Below are positions 19,946-40,693 of a DNA stretch of 64,000 nucleotides, piece by piece. Both the position numbers and the translations under genes were made by a program. The notes beneath the pieces were generated by a model. It ran no database searches. It worked only from the letters and a program-made list of their open reading frames with translations, and was not told the origin of the DNA. This DNA comes from Guillardia theta CCMP2712 (taxonomy: Eukaryota > Protista > Cryptophyta): contig NW_005434644.1 in the NCBI RefSeq assembly GCF_000315625.1, forward strand, positions 575,377-639,376. Reading direction: 5' to 3'. Every line of letters starts with the position of its first letter. The stretch's first letter is position 1.

Positions 19946-22702
19946 ATGGCGCCAAGTCGCCAAACTATGACCATGCTAGCGCTGGGAGGTGTTCCCGCAA
20001 TCATCATCTTCATCTTTCGACTTCTTCAGGCGATCAAGGTCTCTCGAAAACGAAAGGACCTTGAGGAGAAAGCGCACAAGCGGAGGAACGAATCGATGCA
20101 ACAGATTGAAAAAGTAGTTGCACTGTCCAAAGAAGGATCCAATGATGAGCCGGGCGATGCTGTCACCAACATAGCGTACAAAGACTTGAAAGAAAAACTC
20201 GAAACAGGACAGCTCGCAGCTTATGATGTTGTGAACGCCTATCGAAGAAAGGCCGCTTCATTGCACAAAGAATTGAATTGCCTCACCGGATTCATTGAAG
20301 GTGCGCTTGAACAAGCAAAGGTAAATCCAACAGTTGCAAACTGTTGACATTCACCGACCTAACTTCAAATTCTCAGACTTTAGATTCCCTAAGAACCTCA
20401 GGCCAGTTGAAAGGCGTTCTTCATGGCATTCCTGTCAGCGTGAAGGAGACGATCCTTCTCAAGGTAAGATGGATGCTTTCCTTGGCGGTAGTTGATGGAG
20501 ATGGCGAGCAGGGTTACGACAGTACAGCAGGTATAGCAAAACGATGTGGAATACTTTCAGAGGAAGACAGCGTCGCCATTGCTGCAATCAAGGTATCCTT
20601 ATACAAACTTTGTCTATCCTACATAGAACTTGCAATGAAGAAACTTATTCAATGTTCTTTGTTATGTCTTCAGGAAGCCGGAGGCGTTCCATTTTGTAGG
20701 ACTAATATTCCTCAGACCAACTTGTCCTACGGATGCAGGTCGTTTGTCGCATTTCCTGCCTTATTCTAGTTTCACATTTTGAGCAGCAACCCAATCTACG
20801 GAGCTACATGCAACCCCTTTAAGAAGGACAGAACATCTGGAGGATCTTCAGGGGGTGAAGCAGCCTTGATCTGTTGTGGGGGTTCAGTCCTGGGCATGGG
20901 TACCGACATAGGGGGGAGCATTCGTGTTCCTGCAGCATTTTGTGGCATTTGTGGTTTCAAGCCATTTTCTGGGTCGCGCATCGTGTTATTTGAGTGTGAA
21001 TCTCATACTGCATTGCCTCGCAGGAGAATATCTCGGAGAGGATCTTTTTCTGTTCTTCCTGGGCAGACAGGAGTAGCAGCTTCCTTTGGGCCTATGGCAA
21101 AGGAAGTAGATACAATTGCAGCAGCAATGTCAGCGTTGGTTACCTATTCGAACAAGTATGATACATTCGTGGTAAGAGATCGTGTTCGAATCATACGACT
21201 CAGTTGCCTGATTTTTGCCAAGGCTCCAATCCCATGGAGCTGGGATACATACAATGCTAGCTCAAAGCTCAGAATCGGATACTATGTCGCGGATGGCTTC
21301 ATAGCCTCAACTCCTGGTGAGTTTGCTCCCGCACCGACATCCCAGTCATACAGAGAGGCAGCGTGTGCTCGGGCGGTCAGGGAGGCTTGTCATGCGATGA
21401 GAGCTCGCGGACATCAGATTATCCCCTTTAAACCACCTCATGCTATCAAGGTATCGTGATTTCATGTTTCAGTTCGATAAGCGCTGAGAAGTATACCAGT
21501 GCTTGTTACTTTTTATCAAGTTGTTGACTGCTGATGGAGGGAAATCCGTACGAGTTGGCATCTATTTCACTACTCTATTGACAGAATGTCTTGTTTAGGT
21601 CTTCGAACTTCTCCAAAACGAGACAGTAAGAACCGATGACTCCCAACCCCCCCCCCCCCCTTCCCAGCCCCCCTCCCCCTGCGATTCATTTCGATTAATA
21701 CAGGTAGATGGAAGTTTAAGAGCCTTCGTAGAAGGGGTGAGAGTGTCTGGATCATTCTGGACTGGAAAACTGCTGCCAAAAGCTCTAAGGAGACAAGGGA
21801 AGAAGCGAGTTGCGGATCTGCTGGAGTCGCAAGGAATATGCTCGACAGATGAGCTTTGGAAAGCGCAGGTACATGTACTTGCTTGAAAGTTTCCCGTTCA
21901 CTCTTTGTCGTCCAGTCTGAGCGGATTCGGTTGCAAGCCATTTGGGAAAAGGCATTCAAAGAGGCCGGCAAGTTGTTGCATATGAGATCGTAAGGCTCCT
22001 TATGCTGCCATCAGGAGTCGACGTCTTGATATGTCCTTCACATACGATGCTTGCGCCCAAGCCGAATGTGGTGGCATCATCTGGTGAATACACAGGGAAA
22101 TAGATGAAATGTGAATTGAATTTCCACATAGGGATTACTTTGTGCTATACGCAGATTTTCAACTTTCTCGATTTTCCAGCAGGTGAGCATGCTCATCTTG
22201 CATGCCACTAATGTACAATGAACATCCTTTGCCTAGGAACTGTTCCAGTTGGTACTGCCAATACAGAAGACGAACTGGCAATGGAGGTCAGTACAAGAGA
22301 TCAGTACGTCAACCGTGAATCGATGCGGGTGTTCACAGGACTGGCCACACAATACGTTGAAGGAGCAGTTCGGCGATGACTTGCAGAGGATGATTGATTC
22401 TAACTTGTGAGATCGCGAATGTGATGTTCTGATTTGAATGACGTGTTTCGGTATGTCAGGGTATACGGTGAACAGCATGATGCGGTGGAGGCAATCGTTC
22501 GTTCTAACTGTCAAGGCATTGTTGGTCTTCCCACGGCCGTGCAGGTCAGGAGCGTTCCCGTGTGGGTTTCATCCGTCATGCTGATTTTTGCTGCTGGAAC
22601 TGGCAGTGTGTCACCTTGCCATGGAAGGAAGAACTCTGCCTACGAGCCATGCGAGAAATTCAATCGGCTCTTGGCAAAAATGTGCCGACACCTTGCTTGT
22701 AA
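19946..22702 (+). CDS. Amidase-signature enzyme, fatty acid amide hydrolase-like
   Basis: N-terminal TM followed by LHGIPVSVKE, GVPFCRTNIPQ, GGSSGGEAAL, GTDIGGSIRVPAAFCGICGFKP and GLPTAVQ. Confidence 0.9.
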
Positions 22703-23914
22703 CTTCACTTTGCCGCGCAGCCTACGGAGCGCCGGGCGGGGCCTGCCAAATGTGAACTTACCCGCTGCCAGCTGACCGTGGGTAGTGCCGAGCCGCATCG
22801 GCCAGTAAACTTCATTATGTGGCGAGTCGGTACCATACTAGCCTCGCTTCAACTTGCCAGTGCCGTGATCATGCCAGCGACACACCGGCGTGAATAAACG
22901 TGCTGCCAGTCACCGAATACGGTCCGTCTCATCATGATGGTGCCGTACGCGGTAGCAGCCACTGCTGATACGGCGTGCATGAGCCGCCTGAGCGGATACT
23001 AAATCGCCACCGACTCATCAATGACCACAAAGTCATCCTACTCCATAGTGCTAGGAATCGTCACTACCGTCGAGTCGACTCGAACTTTTCACGACAGGGG
23101 GGGACCTGATACCATGAACGGGACCCTTGAAAGCCGAAATCACTGAATCAACCGTTTCGAAATGCCAGTTTGGAACAATTGGGAACGATCCGACATTCCT
23201 CAGTACCTCGAACTTCAAACCAGCGGCGGCGACAATCATGTGAGCCTCCGGCTGCCGGCCGCTGAGTTCCGAGTATCAGTGGTTCAGTGGGCAACACGGT
23301 AGGCGGGATGAGGGTTCCGAGTTCAGTTGTTTGTATGGCCTGTGCGACCGAAAGTGCCTCGGATCGGAAAGAGTCTTGAGTCAGTTTTGCTCTGCCACCG
23401 ATTGTCCTCTGTCGGATTCTGAAAGTTTTGACTTAACTTTGAGTAAAGCGTTTTCAACCCGGTGCTGCCATCCGGGCCGACCGCCCGGCCGCCGATCGGA
23501 TCATCGATCGGATCATGGCCGCTCAGGGTGCCGGCCCGGGGCGACAATCGGAACTCCGGCCCCCGGGGAGTCCGCCGCCTCAACGAGGGCCCCCGCGCCG
23601 GTTGCCCTTTACTCCGGGTATCATCGTGACCGTCGGACTGAGGCCGGGCTCCATCACCGTCGTCGGACTCGGAGTCAGACTCGAGTCACGAGGTCGCAAT
23701 TAGACTCAGTCCTCGGACTCCACTAGCCTAGTAGCCGAAGACGCTTTAAGATGATCAAGTACCGGAGGCCCGAGAGGCTTTACAATCCATGATCCCCTGA
23801 AACTTCTTGGGTCGAAGCGTTGCAAGATTAGACCTCCGCATCTCCCTCGTTTATAATCTTGTACGCGCGCTCCTTATATCATAATACGGTCTCGCTCCTC
23901 TCCTCCGCATCTCC

Positions 23915-24340
23915 TGAACCATGCCATGCTGTTCGGTGACCTTCGTCGACCTCGGCCTCTCTCGCGCCCTCCCCTCCTCCAGTCCCCGTCCTTCTCTCAA
24001 GCTCTCCCCAGCACAGCGGGCATTCGTCGACGCCAACAAGCCCTCCGACGGCAGGAGAGCGACTGAGCTCCCGGCAGGAGCAGTGCGAGTGGAGTCGCGG
24101 GGTGAGGAGCTGATTGCGGCAGTGCTGGAGGCGAAGAAGCGGGGAGTGCGACTACAGGAGAGCAGCAGGAAGCAGGGGATGCTCAAGAGAAGGACGTGGT
24201 TGCTGGACGGCGGGGATAGCTCACCGGGGGGATCCTTCAAGGACGTTACAGCAGCAGCAGGATCGTGGAGGGATTGAGGAGGGAGAGTATCGAGATGAAA
24301 GTCAGGTGTATAATAGGCAGCACGTGTGTAGACATTGAGA
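23915..24340 (+). repeat. Left arm of 426-bp inverted duplication (partial gene copy)
   Basis: Reverse complement of 24780-25205, with about 4 substitutions seen by eye. Confidence 0.95.
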
Positions 24341-24356
24341 CATTAATACGGTGAAT

Positions 24357-25199
24357 CTAAGTGAAAATTTTCGCTGCATTTGCCTTAAGATAGTCGATAT
24401 CAGACACATCAACACTCAAGTCATGTAGACAACCTGTAAATAGTTGCTGTGCCATCGGGTAGGAAAACGACCTGTTGTGAGAAATCTCTCTATGAATGCA
24501 TCGCTTTAGAATCATGATCTGTTCTTGCATCAACACGATCAACAAGCACCTGTTCTCGAGAGTGTCGGTGTTTTCTTGGAGCAGCAGCGTCGGATGCACC
24601 TGCCCTTCTCATGACTTTCTCAAAACTTCCTTCAGCCATGTAAGACTCGCACTCCACCGGCCTCCTCCTCTCTATGAATCTGAGAGACTTTCATAAGCAT
24701 GAAACTGCAAATCAATCTCGAATAAAAGTAATCAAGCCAAAATTTACAAGGCACATTAGATTAAGTAGATCATTCATTCTCTCAATGTCTACACAAGTGC
24801 TGCTTATTATACACCTGACTTTCATCTCGATACTCTCCCTCCTCAATCCCTCCACGATCCTGCTGCTGCTGTAACGTTCTTGAAGGATCCCCCCGGTGAG
24901 CTATCCCCGCCGTCCAGCAACCACGTCCTTCTCTTGAGCATCCCCTGCTTCCTGCTGCTCTCCTGTAGTCGCACTCCCCGCTTCTTCGCCTCCAGCACTG
25001 CCGCAATCAGCTCCTCACCCCGCGACTCCACTCGCACTGCTCCTGCCGGGAGCTCAGTCGCTCTCCTGCCGTCGGAGGGCTTGTTGGCGTCGACGAATGC
25101 CCGCTGTGCTGGGGAGAGCTTGAGAGAAGGACGGGGACGGGAGGAGGGGAGGGCGCGAGAGAGGCCGAGGTCGACGAAGGTCACCGAACAGCATGGCAT
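24357..25199 (-). CDS. Hypothetical multi-exon protein
   Basis: ATG at 25199. Plausible GT-AG exons continue through the spacer between the repeat arms: FMLMKVSQIHREEEAGG, VHPTLLLQENTDTLEN and CLHDLSVDVSDIDYLKANAAKIFT*. Confidence 0.55.
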
Positions 25200-25205
25200 G
25201 GTTCA
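24780..25205 (-). repeat. Right arm of 426-bp inverted duplication (5' part of the intact gene)
   Basis: Reverse complement of 23915-24340. Confidence 0.95.
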
Positions 25206-25686
25206 CGGTTGAGTTAAGCCGCAGCGGCGTGAGGCGGTCTGTCCGCGCCGCGCCGGTGCGTCCGCGCCGCGCCGGTGCCGCCGGGCGCAAGTTAGCCTAC
25301 CGTACGGTAGTACAAGCGGCCTAGCGTCTAGAGCTGATATGGTCTAGCGTTTAGAGCTGATATGGTCCTCAGGGCCTAACTCAGTTTACGACACGACTGA
25401 TCCGATGACCGTCAGATGGTCCCGTGGCCAGTCAAAACCCCACTGGCTCCGGTCACGAGGAGGCCTGACGGTCAAGCAGCCTCGTGTCACAAGGCGTCAA
25501 AACTCTTAGCCTGGCACGTGGCGATGGTACCGGGTCACCGGGTGACCGACAGACTCAGTTGACTAGGCGGGCCTGAGTGGTTGAACAGAGCAACTGCCAA
25601 GTGAGGCAGGCTCGGAGTGGAATGATGAATCTGCGTGATCGTTCCTCCATGCTGCAGTCGGGAGAGAGAGAGACGAGAGGGAGACG

Positions 25687-27104
25687 ATGGCTGCAACTCT
25701 GATGGCATCGTAGAGCATCCAGCCAGTGTCAAGTGAATCTCCTCTGTTGCACACTTCGATCAAGCCCCGCACATGTCGCCAGAAGATATAGCAAGGAGGG
25801 AATGCGCTCGCCTCGAAACGTGGAGTGATGTGGATCAGAGATCGATCGTCGTCGATCCGTTGAAAGGAGGGATGTCCAATAGCATGTTTGTCTGTCGGTC
25901 CGCAGGTACTTTTCCTTTGCATGCGCTATCGGAGGTTGAGACGATTGCCAGGGAACATGGCGGTAGTTCGATTTTTCGGTCAGATGGGAGGATTGATAGA
26001 TCGGAACGAAGAGGTCCAAGTGTTCCTCGAGATGTCACGGAGGAGACTGGGCCCGGCATGTCTGGGGATGATATACTCCGATGAACAACAGCCCTCCCCT
26101 CCTGCAAGTGGCAAGGCTGAGAGCGAGGGCCGCCCGGCTGCCTTGCCCATCGGACGCATCGAGGAGTTTCTGCAAGGATGGAGGACCCTTGAACCCAGCG
26201 ACTACCGCGACGACGTCATGATCGGGACGATTGTGACGAACATGAAGAAATGGCACCAGACTCAGGTGCAGTCGGTGACTTGCAAGCCTCGCATCCTCCA
26301 AGATCTCCGTCGCATGCTCCGCAAGATCGCTTCAAACGATGGCGAAGTGTTTGAAAAACTTGCAAGTTTGGGGTATGAGGGCAAAGCTGACGTTGTTGGA
26401 CAAGCAACCAAGTTCGTTGAGGTTGGTCTTGCTTGTTTAAGTCCTCTTCCTCAGTGCATGTCTGTAGGAATATGCAAGTATGACCTTGAGAGAAGAGGAG
26501 CTTGGCTTCTGCCACAACGATCTCCAATATGGGAATGTCATGGTGAAAGAATCGACGAAAGAGCTCACGTTCATCGATTTTGAATACAGCGGGTACAACC
26601 CCATCTACTGTACGTCCACCCTTTGTTTCGACCAAGTCTCACCGTGGGACTGCAGACGACATGGCGAACTTTTGGTGTGAGATGGCGGCTGACTACACAG
26701 AGGGCGTCTATGGGTGCGGATTCCACCAGCCTCTTGGCCCAGAAGGGTTTCCCAGCGAGGAGACGCAAAGGGCAACCGTGAGACGCTACCTGAGCGCAGG
26801 AGGAGAGAAGCCGAGTGAGCAGGAGATAGAGCGTTGGAGGTCCGGTGTTGCATGTCGCCGGATGTCGCTGACTGTCTGGCAGGATGCAGGCTCTCCGTTG
26901 GGTGACAGCAAGCCACCTCTTCTGGGGGCTGTGGGGGCTGCTGCAGGTGACGTCAGCTTTGCTCCGGGTGTTTCTGACATGCTCTGGTTGAGTTAGGCCG
27001 AGAATGTCTCGAAACCGTTCGAGGAGGGTGAGTTCAACTATGTGCTATATGCTGAGAACCGCCTGTCTGCCTTTCAACGTGATTGGGGCCTAGCGGGGCA
27101 ATGA
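25687..27104 (+). CDS. Choline/ethanolamine kinase
   Basis: [17 protein letters not shown], Brenner motif [12 protein letters not shown], choline kinase motif [19 protein letters not shown] and SHLFWGLW. Confidence 0.9.
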
Positions 27105-38050: not shown

Positions 38051-40693
38051 TCAAAGAAGCCCGTCAATAATAAGGGATCGATGTTCGCTGGCTATTCCTA
38101 GCTCCTCCAACCTAAATTTCGATCAGTGGAGGACCTCGTGGAAACACTGTCAAGTCAGCACCTGCTCTCATCCATTTCGCTCAGCTTTGCTCCATCCAAT
38201 GACTCACGTCGAAACAGATCAATGTACATGAGGAGACCTTTGGAGGTCAGTGCCTCACATACCTAATTATGATGTCAGAGCACTAAATCACTGCAGGCAG
38301 GCGATACACCTCTTCCAGCGTCATCTCCCGCAGTGAAGTTTCCCTCAGAGTCTCCGCTTGTGCAGGAAAGTCGTCAGAGTCTCCAATGTCAGCACTCCCA
38401 GCCCCTCGAGACGTTGAAGCCACCAGCCTACAAATCGCAATCAGACCATTCATACTCGCCTGTTCACTAAGGATGTCAAACCTTTCGGCTCCTCCATATC
38501 TATCCAGCTCAAGATGCAGCAGTTGCACTTGCAGCGCGAGCTTATCACGAATGTCTTTGAGTTTTGAACGTCCATCATGCCTTGAGCCACCGTCACATGC
38601 GCCGCCGCTTCCATGTGGTTCTGGCTCTCCATTCGCTGGGCCTGCTGTACATGGAGCCTCGGCACTAGACGTGTACATCTCATCAAGCGCATTATGCAGC
38701 TCTTCCATTTCAGTCAAGCCTTGATCAAGCTGCAGCAACATGAATCCGTAAGCACAGACAGTTCAAGTTACCTGCATCGCAACACTACGAAGTGATCGGA
38801 ACATTTCCGTGGATTGTTCAGCAGAACTAAAAACATGATGAGAGAAGCATCGTTCAAAAACAGTTGCAAAACTACCGGCCGACATCGAAAGCAGCACTGT
38901 TTGCACCTCGGATGAAATCGTTCGCCATGGGCACTGGCCTAGCACCGCTTGACTGGGGAGGAGCACTTGCCATTCCAGCAACCGCTGCACCGCAAGGGGC
39001 AACTTCGTCATCTCTTTGGTGGGCATTGTCATCAGCCTTTCCATTAACCGGACTTGCTCTCGGCGATAATCTGTGTGCTGTTGGCGACGGGGGATTGTGG
39101 ACTACATTGTGTTCTTGTCTCCATGCATGAGCATCTTCCCACAATTTTTGAAGTGTAGTGTCCGTGTCAAGCCCAACCCTGGGTTGGACTTCTGTCGTCG
39201 ATACATAAGAAGAGAAGATTATAGTGCAAGCATGTCTGCAGGGCAAATTGTCTGCCCACTGTCCCTCAAGCATCACGCCATCTGGCCATGTCCAAACTCC
39301 ATTTCCATGTTTCAAGTTGTTCTTGTATTCCCCATTGTATTTCCTTCCATCAGGCCAAGTATAAACCTTGTAATGAAAATCAATAATGCTTTCAGCAAAT
39401 GACACACATTTACCCCATGTCCATGCATCTTGTCTTTGAGATAATATCCTTCATATCTCCTTCCGTCCGCGTGGGTCAAAATACCAAAGCCAGTGCACTT
39501 GCTTTGCACCCACGCCCCACGGTATACACGACCATCACCCCATGCCATGTAGCCCTGGCCAGTTTGCATGCCATCCAAGTATTCGCCTTTCAATCACATT
39601 CACAACTTTGAAATTCTTAGATTCAATCGTTTTCGCACCTTTGTACATCGAACCATCCGGCCATGTATGCAAACCATGGCCATTCTTCTTATTGTCCTTG
39701 TACTCACCATCGTATTTTGCCCCATTGGCCCATGTGTAAATACCATGACCCTGCGCAGAATTTTCAATCCTCAACCTGGGCCTTTCAGATGCAATACCTG
39801 CATCTTGTCGTTGACATACTCTCCTGCATATCGTCTTCCATCCTTGTGCGTCAAAATGCCAAAACCGGTGCATTTGCTGTTGACCCAGTATCCTTCGTAA
39901 CGCCTTCCATCTGCCCAAGTCATCAAGCCATAACCGGTCTGTACTGAATCCACGTATTCTCCTTCGTATCTATGAAAACCACGTATCAATAATTCTTCCA
40001 AAGTCTCATGAATCCAAGCTGCACCTTGCGCCACTTGGCCAAGTCTGCACACCACGGCCATTCTTCTTGTCTTCTCTGTATTCACCTTCATAGCGTGCTC
40101 CTTCTGCCCAATAGTACACTGAAACGAGAATCAGGATATTATCCAACCCAATCACGCTTTACCCCCTTTGCCATGCATCTTGTCAAGCTTATACTCGCCC
40201 TGTACAATCAGATTACTTCCGTTTACAAGCAAACAAAGCAAGTTCTTTACCACGTATCTTCTTCCATCTTTGTATGTAAGGACACCCCTACCATTACATC
40301 TGTTTTCAAACCATTCCCCATCGTATCTCCTTCCATCCGCCCAAACCATGAACCCTCGGCCAGTCATCATGTCTTCTACCCATTCTCCCTCATATCTATG
40401 ATGCCGTCATTTGCATCTACCATCTTTCACAATGCAAATGAGACACTCACCGGCTCCCGTCACCCCACGTCTTGACATGATATCCATTTTTGGCCTGATA
40501 GTGTGCTCCTGTATGTGGAGCTGGGACGGGATTGGCCATCCTCCCAGGAAAATTGATGTAGCGACGTCAAGCCCGTAAGATACTGGCCTCCAATCCTGTA
40601 AACGTGTTCGTTATGCCTTGTACGACACGCCATACACATCATGGAATGTTGGCAAAGAATAACAGAACAAAAATGCAGTGCTACACCCATCAT
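38051..40693 (-). CDS. MORN-repeat protein with C-terminal SAM domain (start uncertain)
   Basis: Many YEGEW...GxG..TWxDG MORN repeats. The spliced C-terminus VCEALTSKGLLMYIDLFRRESLDGAKLSEMDESRLEELGIASEHRSLIIDGLL* is SAM-like. Confidence 0.85.

What the first reader, a model, noticed from the sequence alone, without database searches (positions are those of the whole stretch)
23915..25205. Gene followed directly by an antisense copy of its own 5' end: built-in hairpin RNA locus
Seen: 23915-24340 and 24780-25205 are 426-bp inverted repeats (about 4 mismatches) around a 439-bp spacer. The spacer reads as the remaining exons of the minus-strand gene (stop at 24357), so only the right copy is complete. 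The left copy covers the ATG into the start of an intron and begins about 16 bp past the stop codon. Inference: the 3'UTR is complementary to the transcript's own 5' coding region, giving up to ~400 bp of dsRNA. The left copy also sits behind a GC-rich island and could be transcribed convergently. This fits a young inverted-duplication siRNA or proto-miRNA locus, or a self-silencing gene.
Basis: partly seen in the sequence, partly recalled or inferred. Interest (0 to 1): 0.75.

Follow-up and report, generated by a model that had tools for sequence, protein, structure and literature searches.

The report
Tail-to-tail twin copies of orphan gene
The inverted repeat is real, but each arm holds a complete copy of a small, intronless gene of unknown function found only in Guillardia theta and Hanusia phi, so this is an ordinary recent inverted gene duplication (or gene-conversion pair), not a gene with a built-in antisense tail.

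Summary
Observation confirmed: 23915-24340 and 24780-25205 are 426-nt inverted repeats with 4 mismatches around a 439-nt spacer. The genome is Guillardia theta CCMP2712.

Each arm carries a whole 118-aa ORF (23921-24277 +, 24843-25199 -). This ORF belongs to a family with at least 39 matches in this genome. Start and stop positions are conserved across the family, and dN/dS is 0.4-0.6. Six paralogs are annotated at NCBI as 104-138-aa proteins; the five I compared match a single uninterrupted ORF exactly. Relatives occur only in G. theta and Hanusia phi.

The spacer "exons" are unsupported. That ORF starts with GTG, has 42% GC around it, and has no relative or Pfam match.

The locus is therefore two intact convergent paralogs, 565 nt from stop to stop. 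Flanks and spacer are unique in the genome. The same family forms other convergent, divergent and tandem pairs. Identity blocks on contig C10 start within a few bases of the ATG, which points to gene conversion.

A hairpin RNA would need read-through of more than 565 nt. I found no Piwi domain, no RdRP and no Dicer-type tandem RNase III in the genome.

This scan already noted inverted pairs of an orphan small-gene family elsewhere in this genome (s1-439553). Interest is low.

The parts
23915..24340 (+). Left arm of the inverted repeat: 6 nt of 5' flank, the complete ORF, and 63 nt past the stop
23921..24277 (+). Left copy of the small orphan gene: intact 118-aa ORF including the stop. Ser21 is derived and Asp108 ancestral relative to paralogs
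24341..24779 (.). Spacer, 41.7% GC, unique in the genome. It most likely holds the 3' untranslated and terminator regions of the two convergent genes. The gap between the two stop codons is 565 nt
24357..24599 (-). It has no paralog, no Pfam match, and every other frame of the spacer has 6-10 stops. Judged not coding
24780..25205 (-). Right arm of the inverted repeat
24843..25199 (-). Right copy of the small orphan gene: intact 118-aa ORF including the stop. Arg21 is ancestral and Asn108 derived
23400..23914 (+). Upstream region of the left copy: 58% GC, followed by an A+T-rich stretch with TATA-like words at about 23851-23890. Unrelated to the right copy's upstream region
25206..25690 (-). 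Upstream region of the right copy: 61% GC, with exact tandem duplications of 19 nt and 23 nt. It is shared head-to-head with the plus-strand choline/ethanolamine kinase gene

Best explanation
The locus is a tail-to-tail (convergent) pair of two intact, nearly identical copies of a small intronless gene. The gene encodes a 118-aa, mostly disordered protein of unknown function and belongs to a family found only in Guillardia theta and its sister genus Hanusia phi.

The pair arose by a local inverted duplication, or is kept alike by gene conversion between the two arms, or both. These same processes have produced tandem, divergent and convergent pairs of this family at other loci. Each copy has its own unrelated upstream region, and the two share a 565-nt A+T-richer interval between their stop codons, where the transcripts probably end.

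Shown here: the repeat, the complete ORF in each arm, family membership, purifying selection on the family, transcription of paralogs, unique flanks and spacer, and recurrence of the arrangement.

Inferred: conversion rather than very recent duplication for this particular pair; that both copies are expressed; and that the inverted repeat has no function of its own.
For: - Repeat geometry and the 4 mismatches.
- Each arm has an ATG-to-stop ORF of 118 aa.
- An own-genome profile search gives at least 39 matches on contigs C10, C151, C46, C86, C21, C49 and others.
- Aligned copies keep the same start and stop and are 103-138 aa long.
- dN/dS is 0.38-0.63 between distant paralogs.
- NCBI models GUITHDRAFT_102367, 147366, 110594, 110595 and 110596 equal single ORFs exactly.
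- MMETSP transcript ORF P0002 is letter for letter the C10:238461-238811 copy.
- Among 1.84 billion representatives, 12 match at E <= 0.001. Every one that carries a source name is from G. theta or Hanusia phi; three ENA entries are unnamed. The best Hanusia protein is 120 aa and aligns over nearly its whole length.
- In the tree the two window copies are sisters (distance 0.0056, against 0.42 or more to any other copy), and copies group by locus.
- Other convergent pairs: C10:237195/238817, C10:240759/242418 and C10:247832/248928, the last with arms running from 2 nt before the ATG to 2 nt after the stop.
- On C10, 100%-identity blocks start at the ATG and stop in mid-ORF. This mosaic pattern is the signature of conversion.
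- The flanks and spacer of the window pair are unique in the genome and unrelated to each other.
Against:
- Names and sources of window-encoded proteins are masked, so I cannot say whether either copy is annotated.
- Without an outgroup genome, recent duplication and ongoing conversion cannot be told apart for this pair.
- The protein has no known domain or confident fold, so the claim that it is a gene rests on ORF conservation, dN/dS and transcripts of paralogs.
Confidence: 0.8

Rival explanations
1. Functional hairpin or double-stranded-RNA locus. Read-through from one copy, or overlapping convergent transcripts, yields long dsRNA that is processed into small RNAs. These would silence this gene or its paralogs.
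For: A transcript across 23900-25220 would fold into a near-perfect stem of about 426 bp. Convergent near-identical pairs recur in the family. The genome has a PAZ-like 883-aa ORF, a dsrm plus DEAD helicase, and one RNase III gene.
Against: - Both arms are complete genes with intact ORFs, not an antisense fragment.
- Read-through of more than 565 nt is needed.
- The own-genome six-frame search found no Piwi candidate, no RdRP (though the RdRP model also rang in none of the control genomes) and only one single-domain RNase III.
- The PAZ match is below Pfam's cut-off, and no Piwi is seen even at E 10.
- The nearest paralogs are only 72-79% identical in DNA, which is poor for trans-silencing.
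- The partner copy in the C10:247.8/248.9 pair is simply frameshifted, as expected of neutral duplicates.
Confidence: 0.07
2. One reading: the right copy continues by splicing into coding exons in the spacer, with the stop at 24357, so the left arm is only a copy of the gene's 5' part.
For: An 80-aa open frame at 24357-24599 on the minus strand ends 16 nt from the left arm. GT..AG words exist between the arm and that frame.
Against: - The in-frame stop at 24843-24845 lies upstream of the proposed donor.
- The family's C-terminus (S-F/W-K/E-D-V-T, then a stop 5-12 residues on) is conserved in most aligned G. theta copies and in Hanusia phi.
- The spacer ORF has no relative in the genome and no Pfam match, starts with GTG, and lies in 42% GC DNA.
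- I searched the two pieces separately by reference. The joined spliced model was not built or searched.
Confidence: 0.04
3. Assembly artefact: a fold-back chimera or mis-join created the second arm.
For: Perfect-looking local palindromes are a known artefact class. No read data were available here.
Against: - The arms differ at 4 sites, and each arm carries one derived change.
- Both flanks are unique and run without N gaps into ordinary genes: amidase on the left, choline kinase on the right.
- The same family has several other inverted pairs of differing ages on other contigs.
Confidence: 0.05
4. A mobile element with long terminal inverted repeats (foldback or MITE-like), in which the ORF is a chance feature of the terminal repeat.
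For: The geometry fits: long arms and a short A+T-richer centre. The outer boundary is sharp. Elements that insert without target duplication have been noted elsewhere in this genome by earlier unchecked notes.
Against: - There is no target-site duplication.
- The spacer and flanks are single-copy.
- Spacers of the other pairs are unrelated.
- The arm termini differ between pairs.
- The arm sequence evolves as a protein-coding gene and is transcribed and annotated as such.
Confidence: 0.03

Closest known systems
Small palindromes or inverted gene duplicates homogenised by arm-to-arm gene conversion (as in primate sex-chromosome palindromes and many multigene families)
   Same: Two complete gene copies in inverted orientation around a unique spacer, with arms about 99% identical. 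Identity is confined to a block with sharp edges. Sister loci of the same family show mosaic identity.
   Different: Very small scale (0.43-kb arms). The identity block is nearly limited to the ORF. Conversion is inferred for this pair, not shown.
Young plant MIR or hairpin-siRNA loci born from inverted duplication of a target gene (model of Allen et al. 2004; cited from my own knowledge)
   Same: Inverted duplication of coding sequence with a short spacer. It could form a long hairpin if transcribed as one RNA.
   Different: Both arms are intact genes, each with its own upstream region. There is no evidence of a single transcript or of small RNAs, and no Argonaute (Piwi) domain was detectable in the genome.
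Convergent gene pairs giving natural antisense transcripts (cis-NATs)
   Same: Tail-to-tail orientation with a short interval of 565 nt between the stops.
   Different: In a cis-NAT the overlap is between different genes' 3' ends. Here any overlap beyond the spacer would also be self-complementary, because the partners are paralogs.
Orphan small intronless gene family of G. theta and Hanusia phi noted earlier in this scan (s1-439553)
   Same: Small intronless ORFs restricted to the same two genera and arranged in convergent and divergent pairs. That note also judged them local amplification, not a mobile element.
   Different: I could not compare sequences with that note, so identity of the two families is likely but unproven. 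That note counts at least 84 genes; my profile found at least 39 matches.

Membership tests
Hairpin-RNA / inverted-duplication siRNA or proto-miRNA locus | Inverted duplication of gene sequence able to form a long stem | tested here: met
   426-nt arms, 99% complementary. MFE -1100 kcal/mol if transcribed as one RNA.
Hairpin-RNA / inverted-duplication siRNA or proto-miRNA locus | One arm is a non-autonomous antisense fragment within the transcript of the other (a single transcription unit) | tested here: not met
   Both arms hold a complete ATG-to-stop ORF of the family's normal length, and their upstream regions are unrelated.
Hairpin-RNA / inverted-duplication siRNA or proto-miRNA locus | Small RNAs of a defined size mapping to the arms | not testable with these tools
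Hairpin-RNA / inverted-duplication siRNA or proto-miRNA locus | Host has Dicer and Argonaute | tested here: inconclusive
   Piwi PF02171: 0 candidates. RdRP PF05183: 0, but the model rang in no control genome either. RNase III: one 277-aa single-domain gene. PAZ: 22.6 bits, below the cut-off, in an 883-aa ORF without Piwi. Dicer_dimer: 23.6 bits, at a dsrm-DEAD helicase. Six-frame, exon-by-exon searches can miss split domains.
Inverted (tail-to-tail) gene duplicate kept alike by gene conversion | Each arm contains a complete gene copy | tested here: met
   ORFs 23921-24277 (+) and 24843-25199 (-). The family alignment has conserved ends.
Inverted (tail-to-tail) gene duplicate kept alike by gene conversion | The two copies are each other's closest relatives within a multigene family | tested here: met
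   In the tree they are sisters (100/99 support) at distance 0.0056, against 0.42 or more to all others.
Inverted (tail-to-tail) gene duplicate kept alike by gene conversion | Identity block with sharp edges and unrelated DNA beyond; mosaic tracts among paralogs | tested here: met
   Window flanks are at shuffle level. C10 copies are 100% identical from the ATG for about 270 nt, then drop to 33-70%.
Inverted (tail-to-tail) gene duplicate kept alike by gene conversion | Conversion (not just recent duplication) demonstrated for this pair | not testable with these tools
   This needs the orthologous locus in another strain or species.
TIR / foldback transposable element | Target-site duplication and repeated copies with shared termini at different sites | tested here: not met
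   No target-site duplication. Spacer and flanks are single-copy. Termini of the other pairs differ.

The most novel reading that the evidence does not exclude
Convergent, near-identical pairs recur in this orphan family (at least four high-identity pairs on C30 and C10, plus looser convergent neighbours on C21 and C151). They might be a selected arrangement in which read-through makes long dsRNA that doses or silences the family. Guillardia shows no recognisable Piwi-domain Argonaute, so this would imply a non-canonical dsRNA pathway, perhaps using the PAZ-only 883-aa protein and the single RNase III.
Probability: 0.06. Interest if true: 0.6.

Novelty: new member of a known kind. Interest (0 to 1): 0.2.

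Why it matters
The main value is as a correction. What looked like a self-targeting hairpin gene is a pair of whole genes, so it should not be counted as an RNA-silencing locus.

There is modest value as a clean, young example of inverted duplication or gene conversion in a fast-evolving family restricted to Guillardia and Hanusia. It also records that identity blocks in this family tend to begin within a few bases of the start codon.

The apparent lack of a Piwi domain in the G. theta nuclear genome, if confirmed on gene models, bears on any small-RNA claim made for this alga.

Tried and rejected
- Pfam on the arm ORF, the spacer ORF and all 13 aligned family members: nothing.
- PDB profile search: nothing.
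- ESM Atlas: no usable hit.
- AlphaFold2 with the family alignment: pLDDT 58.6, with two helices only. I ran no fold search because the model is too poor.
- Rfam and tRNA scans of 22000-27000: nothing.
- The bacterial-type promoter/terminator scan is uninformative for a eukaryote.
- Similarity between the two flanks and between the two ends of the spacer: none.
- Similarity between the spacers of different inverted pairs: none.
- A link between the family and a Myb gene holds only in the C46 array.
- Literature on RNAi in Guillardia or cryptophytes: four searches and two readings gave nothing relevant.
- The joined spliced model (arm ORF plus spacer ORF) was deliberately neither built nor searched. 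Its two pieces were searched separately by reference.
- The contig is not human, and it is not a virus or toxin locus.

Full report
**Observation.** The arms are 23915-24340 and 24780-25205, each 426 nt, 99% complementary, with 439 nt between them. It is the only long inverted repeat in the 64-kb window.
- The four mismatches are at 23981/25139, 24242/24878, 24316/24804 and 24324/24796.
- Identity ends abruptly. The 400 nt outside the arms and the 220 nt inside them align no better than shuffled sequence (z 0.1 and 0.5).
- There is no N run near the locus.

**Organism and setting.** The window is contig C30:575377-639376 of an 87.1-Mb, 669-contig assembly. Protein hits from paralogs carry NCBI names of Guillardia theta CCMP2712. 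This confirms a lead from earlier notes about ejectisome genes. The repeat lies between a plus-strand amidase gene (Pfam Amidase, E 4.5e-38) and a plus-strand choline/ethanolamine kinase gene.

**What the arms are.** Each arm holds an ATG-to-stop ORF of 118 aa: 23921-24277 on the plus strand and 24843-25199 on the minus strand. The arm runs from 6 nt before the ATG to 63 nt after the stop.

The ORF belongs to a multi-copy family:
- A single-protein six-frame search of the genome gave 26 matches, and a 13-sequence profile gave at least 39. They lie on C10, C151, C46, C86, C21, C49, C5, C84, C142, C212 and C665.
- The aligned copies share the start, several motifs (a hydrophobic L-V-D-L stretch, K-L-S-P-S/A-Q-Q-A-F/Y-x-D-A, V-R-V-x-S-x-G-x-E-L, and S-F/W-K/E-D-V-T) and, in most copies, a stop 5-12 residues after the last motif. 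Lengths are 103-138 aa.
- Between distant paralogs dN/dS is 0.38-0.63 at dS 0.7-1.7. The frame has therefore been kept open under moderate constraint.
- Six paralogs are annotated at NCBI as hypothetical proteins of 104-138 aa. The five whose sequences I compared are identical to single uninterrupted ORFs.
- A 119-aa MMETSP transcript ORF is letter for letter the C10:238461-238811 copy.
- A profile search of 1.84 billion representative proteins found only 12 matches at E <= 0.001. Every one with a source name is from G. theta or Hanusia phi, and three ENA entries carry no name. One is a 120-aa Hanusia protein that aligns over nearly its full length.
- The family has no Pfam, PDB or Atlas relative. 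Its AlphaFold2 model is poor (pLDDT 58.6), showing two helices in an otherwise disordered chain.

This fails on several counts.
- The C-terminus up to that stop is conserved across most paralogs and in Hanusia.
- The spacer ORF (24357-24599, minus strand) starts with GTG and has no relative in the genome and no Pfam match.
- It lies in DNA of 41.7% GC, against 61% for the arms, and every other frame there is full of stops.

I searched the two pieces separately by reference and did not build or search a joined model.

Both arms are therefore complete genes. The locus is a convergent, tail-to-tail pair with 565 nt between the stop codons. The two copies differ by two amino acids. By comparison with paralogs, each copy carries one derived change: Ser21 in the left copy and Asn108 in the right.

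**Origin.** The 6 kb around the pair is single-copy apart from the ORF itself. I found no target-site duplication and no shared termini with other pairs. Spacers of different pairs are unrelated. A mobile element is therefore unlikely.

In a maximum-likelihood tree the two window copies are sisters at distance 0.0056, and every other copy is at 0.42 or more. Copies group by genomic cluster. That pattern fits local amplification, concerted evolution, or both.

The arrangement recurs in the family:
- Convergent high-identity pairs on C10: 237195/238817 (arms about 1 kb, 88-98% identical), 240759/242418, and 247832/248928 (352-nt arms, 94.6% identical, 398-nt spacer, one copy frameshifted).
- Looser convergent neighbours on C21 and C151.
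- Divergent pairs on C10, C21 and C49.
- Tandem arrays on C46, C86, C10 and C151.

Several identity blocks begin within 2-9 nt of the ATG. On C10, copies are 100% identical from the ATG for about 270 nt and then fall to 33-70%. Such mosaic, ORF-bounded blocks are what gene conversion between older, diverged paralogs produces. Randomly placed duplication breakpoints would seldom fall so close to ORF ends at several loci.

For the window pair I cannot separate a very recent inverted duplication from conversion without an outgroup locus.

**The hairpin idea.** An RNA spanning 23900-25220 would indeed fold into one long stem (-1100 kcal/mol). It would, however, require read-through of more than 565 nt past a stop codon and across the interval where two convergent genes should terminate.

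Six-frame HMM searches of the whole assembly gave the following:

| Component | Result |
|---|---|
| Piwi | No candidate |
| RdRP | No match, but the model also rang in none of the control genomes |
| RNase III | One domain, in a 277-aa single-domain gene |
| PAZ | Sub-threshold match (22.6 bits) in an 883-aa ORF with no Piwi even at E 10; its nearest Atlas clusters are N-terminal Argonaute fragments at weak scores |
| Dicer_dimer | Borderline match that belongs to a dsrm-DEAD-Helicase_C protein, not a Dicer |

These searches work exon by exon and can miss split domains, so the absence is provisional. Even so, nothing here supports a canonical siRNA pathway. Rfam and tRNA scans of the region were empty.

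**Verdict.** Its core claim, a gene followed by an antisense copy of its own 5' end that acts as a built-in hairpin, is not supported.

The best explanation is an ordinary tail-to-tail pair of intact paralogs of an orphan family restricted to Guillardia and Hanusia, generated or homogenised by local recombination. An earlier report of this scan (s1-439553) reached the same kind of conclusion for inverted pairs of an orphan small-gene family elsewhere in this genome. My searches independently reproduce the G. theta plus Hanusia phi restriction, but I could not verify that it is the same family. Interest is low.

Noticed in passing
G000:C10:234745-244112 (loci L040, L041): This is a nested, partly eroded palindrome of about 7 kb centred near 238 kb. 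Arm pieces 234745-235608 / 241009-241872 are 97.5% identical, and 236557-237566 / 238452-239494 are 88%. It carries seven or more copies of the same small-gene family in mixed orientation, with mosaic 99-100% identity blocks that start at the ATG.
   Followed up: partly
G000:C46:377000-384800 (L013, L030, L046): This is a tandem array with a unit of about 1.5 kb. In each unit a family member (121-130 aa, plus strand) sits head-to-head, about 160 nt away, with a 214-aa Myb-like gene of SHAQKYF type (Pfam Myb_DNA-binding, 24.8 bits). The Myb partner is found only in this array and on the unplaced contig C665.
   Followed up: partly
G000:C54:418957-421608 (L048:2958-5609 +): An 883-aa single-exon ORF has a sub-threshold PAZ domain (residues 378-486) and no Piwi domain. 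Its nearest Atlas clusters are ArgoN/ArgoL1/PAZ fragments at a weak score of 0.79. The whole assembly gave no Piwi candidate, so G. theta may keep a PAZ-only remnant of Argonaute, or a very divergent one.
   Followed up: partly
G000:C71:246753-248834 (L050:1254-3335 -): A 693-aa ORF carries an N-terminal dsRNA-binding motif fragment followed by DEAD and Helicase_C domains. It is the source of a borderline Dicer_dimer hit, and its domain order does not match that of Dicer.
   Followed up: partly
window 25241-25278 and 25321-25367: Two exact or near-exact tandem duplications, of 19 nt and 23 nt, lie in the GC-rich interval between the right gene copy and the choline kinase gene.
   Followed up: no
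window 39267-40110: Three diverged direct copies (65-70% identical) of a 91-nt unit lie at a spacing of about 375 nt. This is probably a repeated domain inside a gene.
   Followed up: no
G000:C10:248582-248929 (L041:6582-6929 -): The partner of the annotated gene GUITHDRAFT_102367 in its own convergent inverted repeat is frameshifted after about 42 codons, so it is a pseudogene arm.
   Followed up: yes
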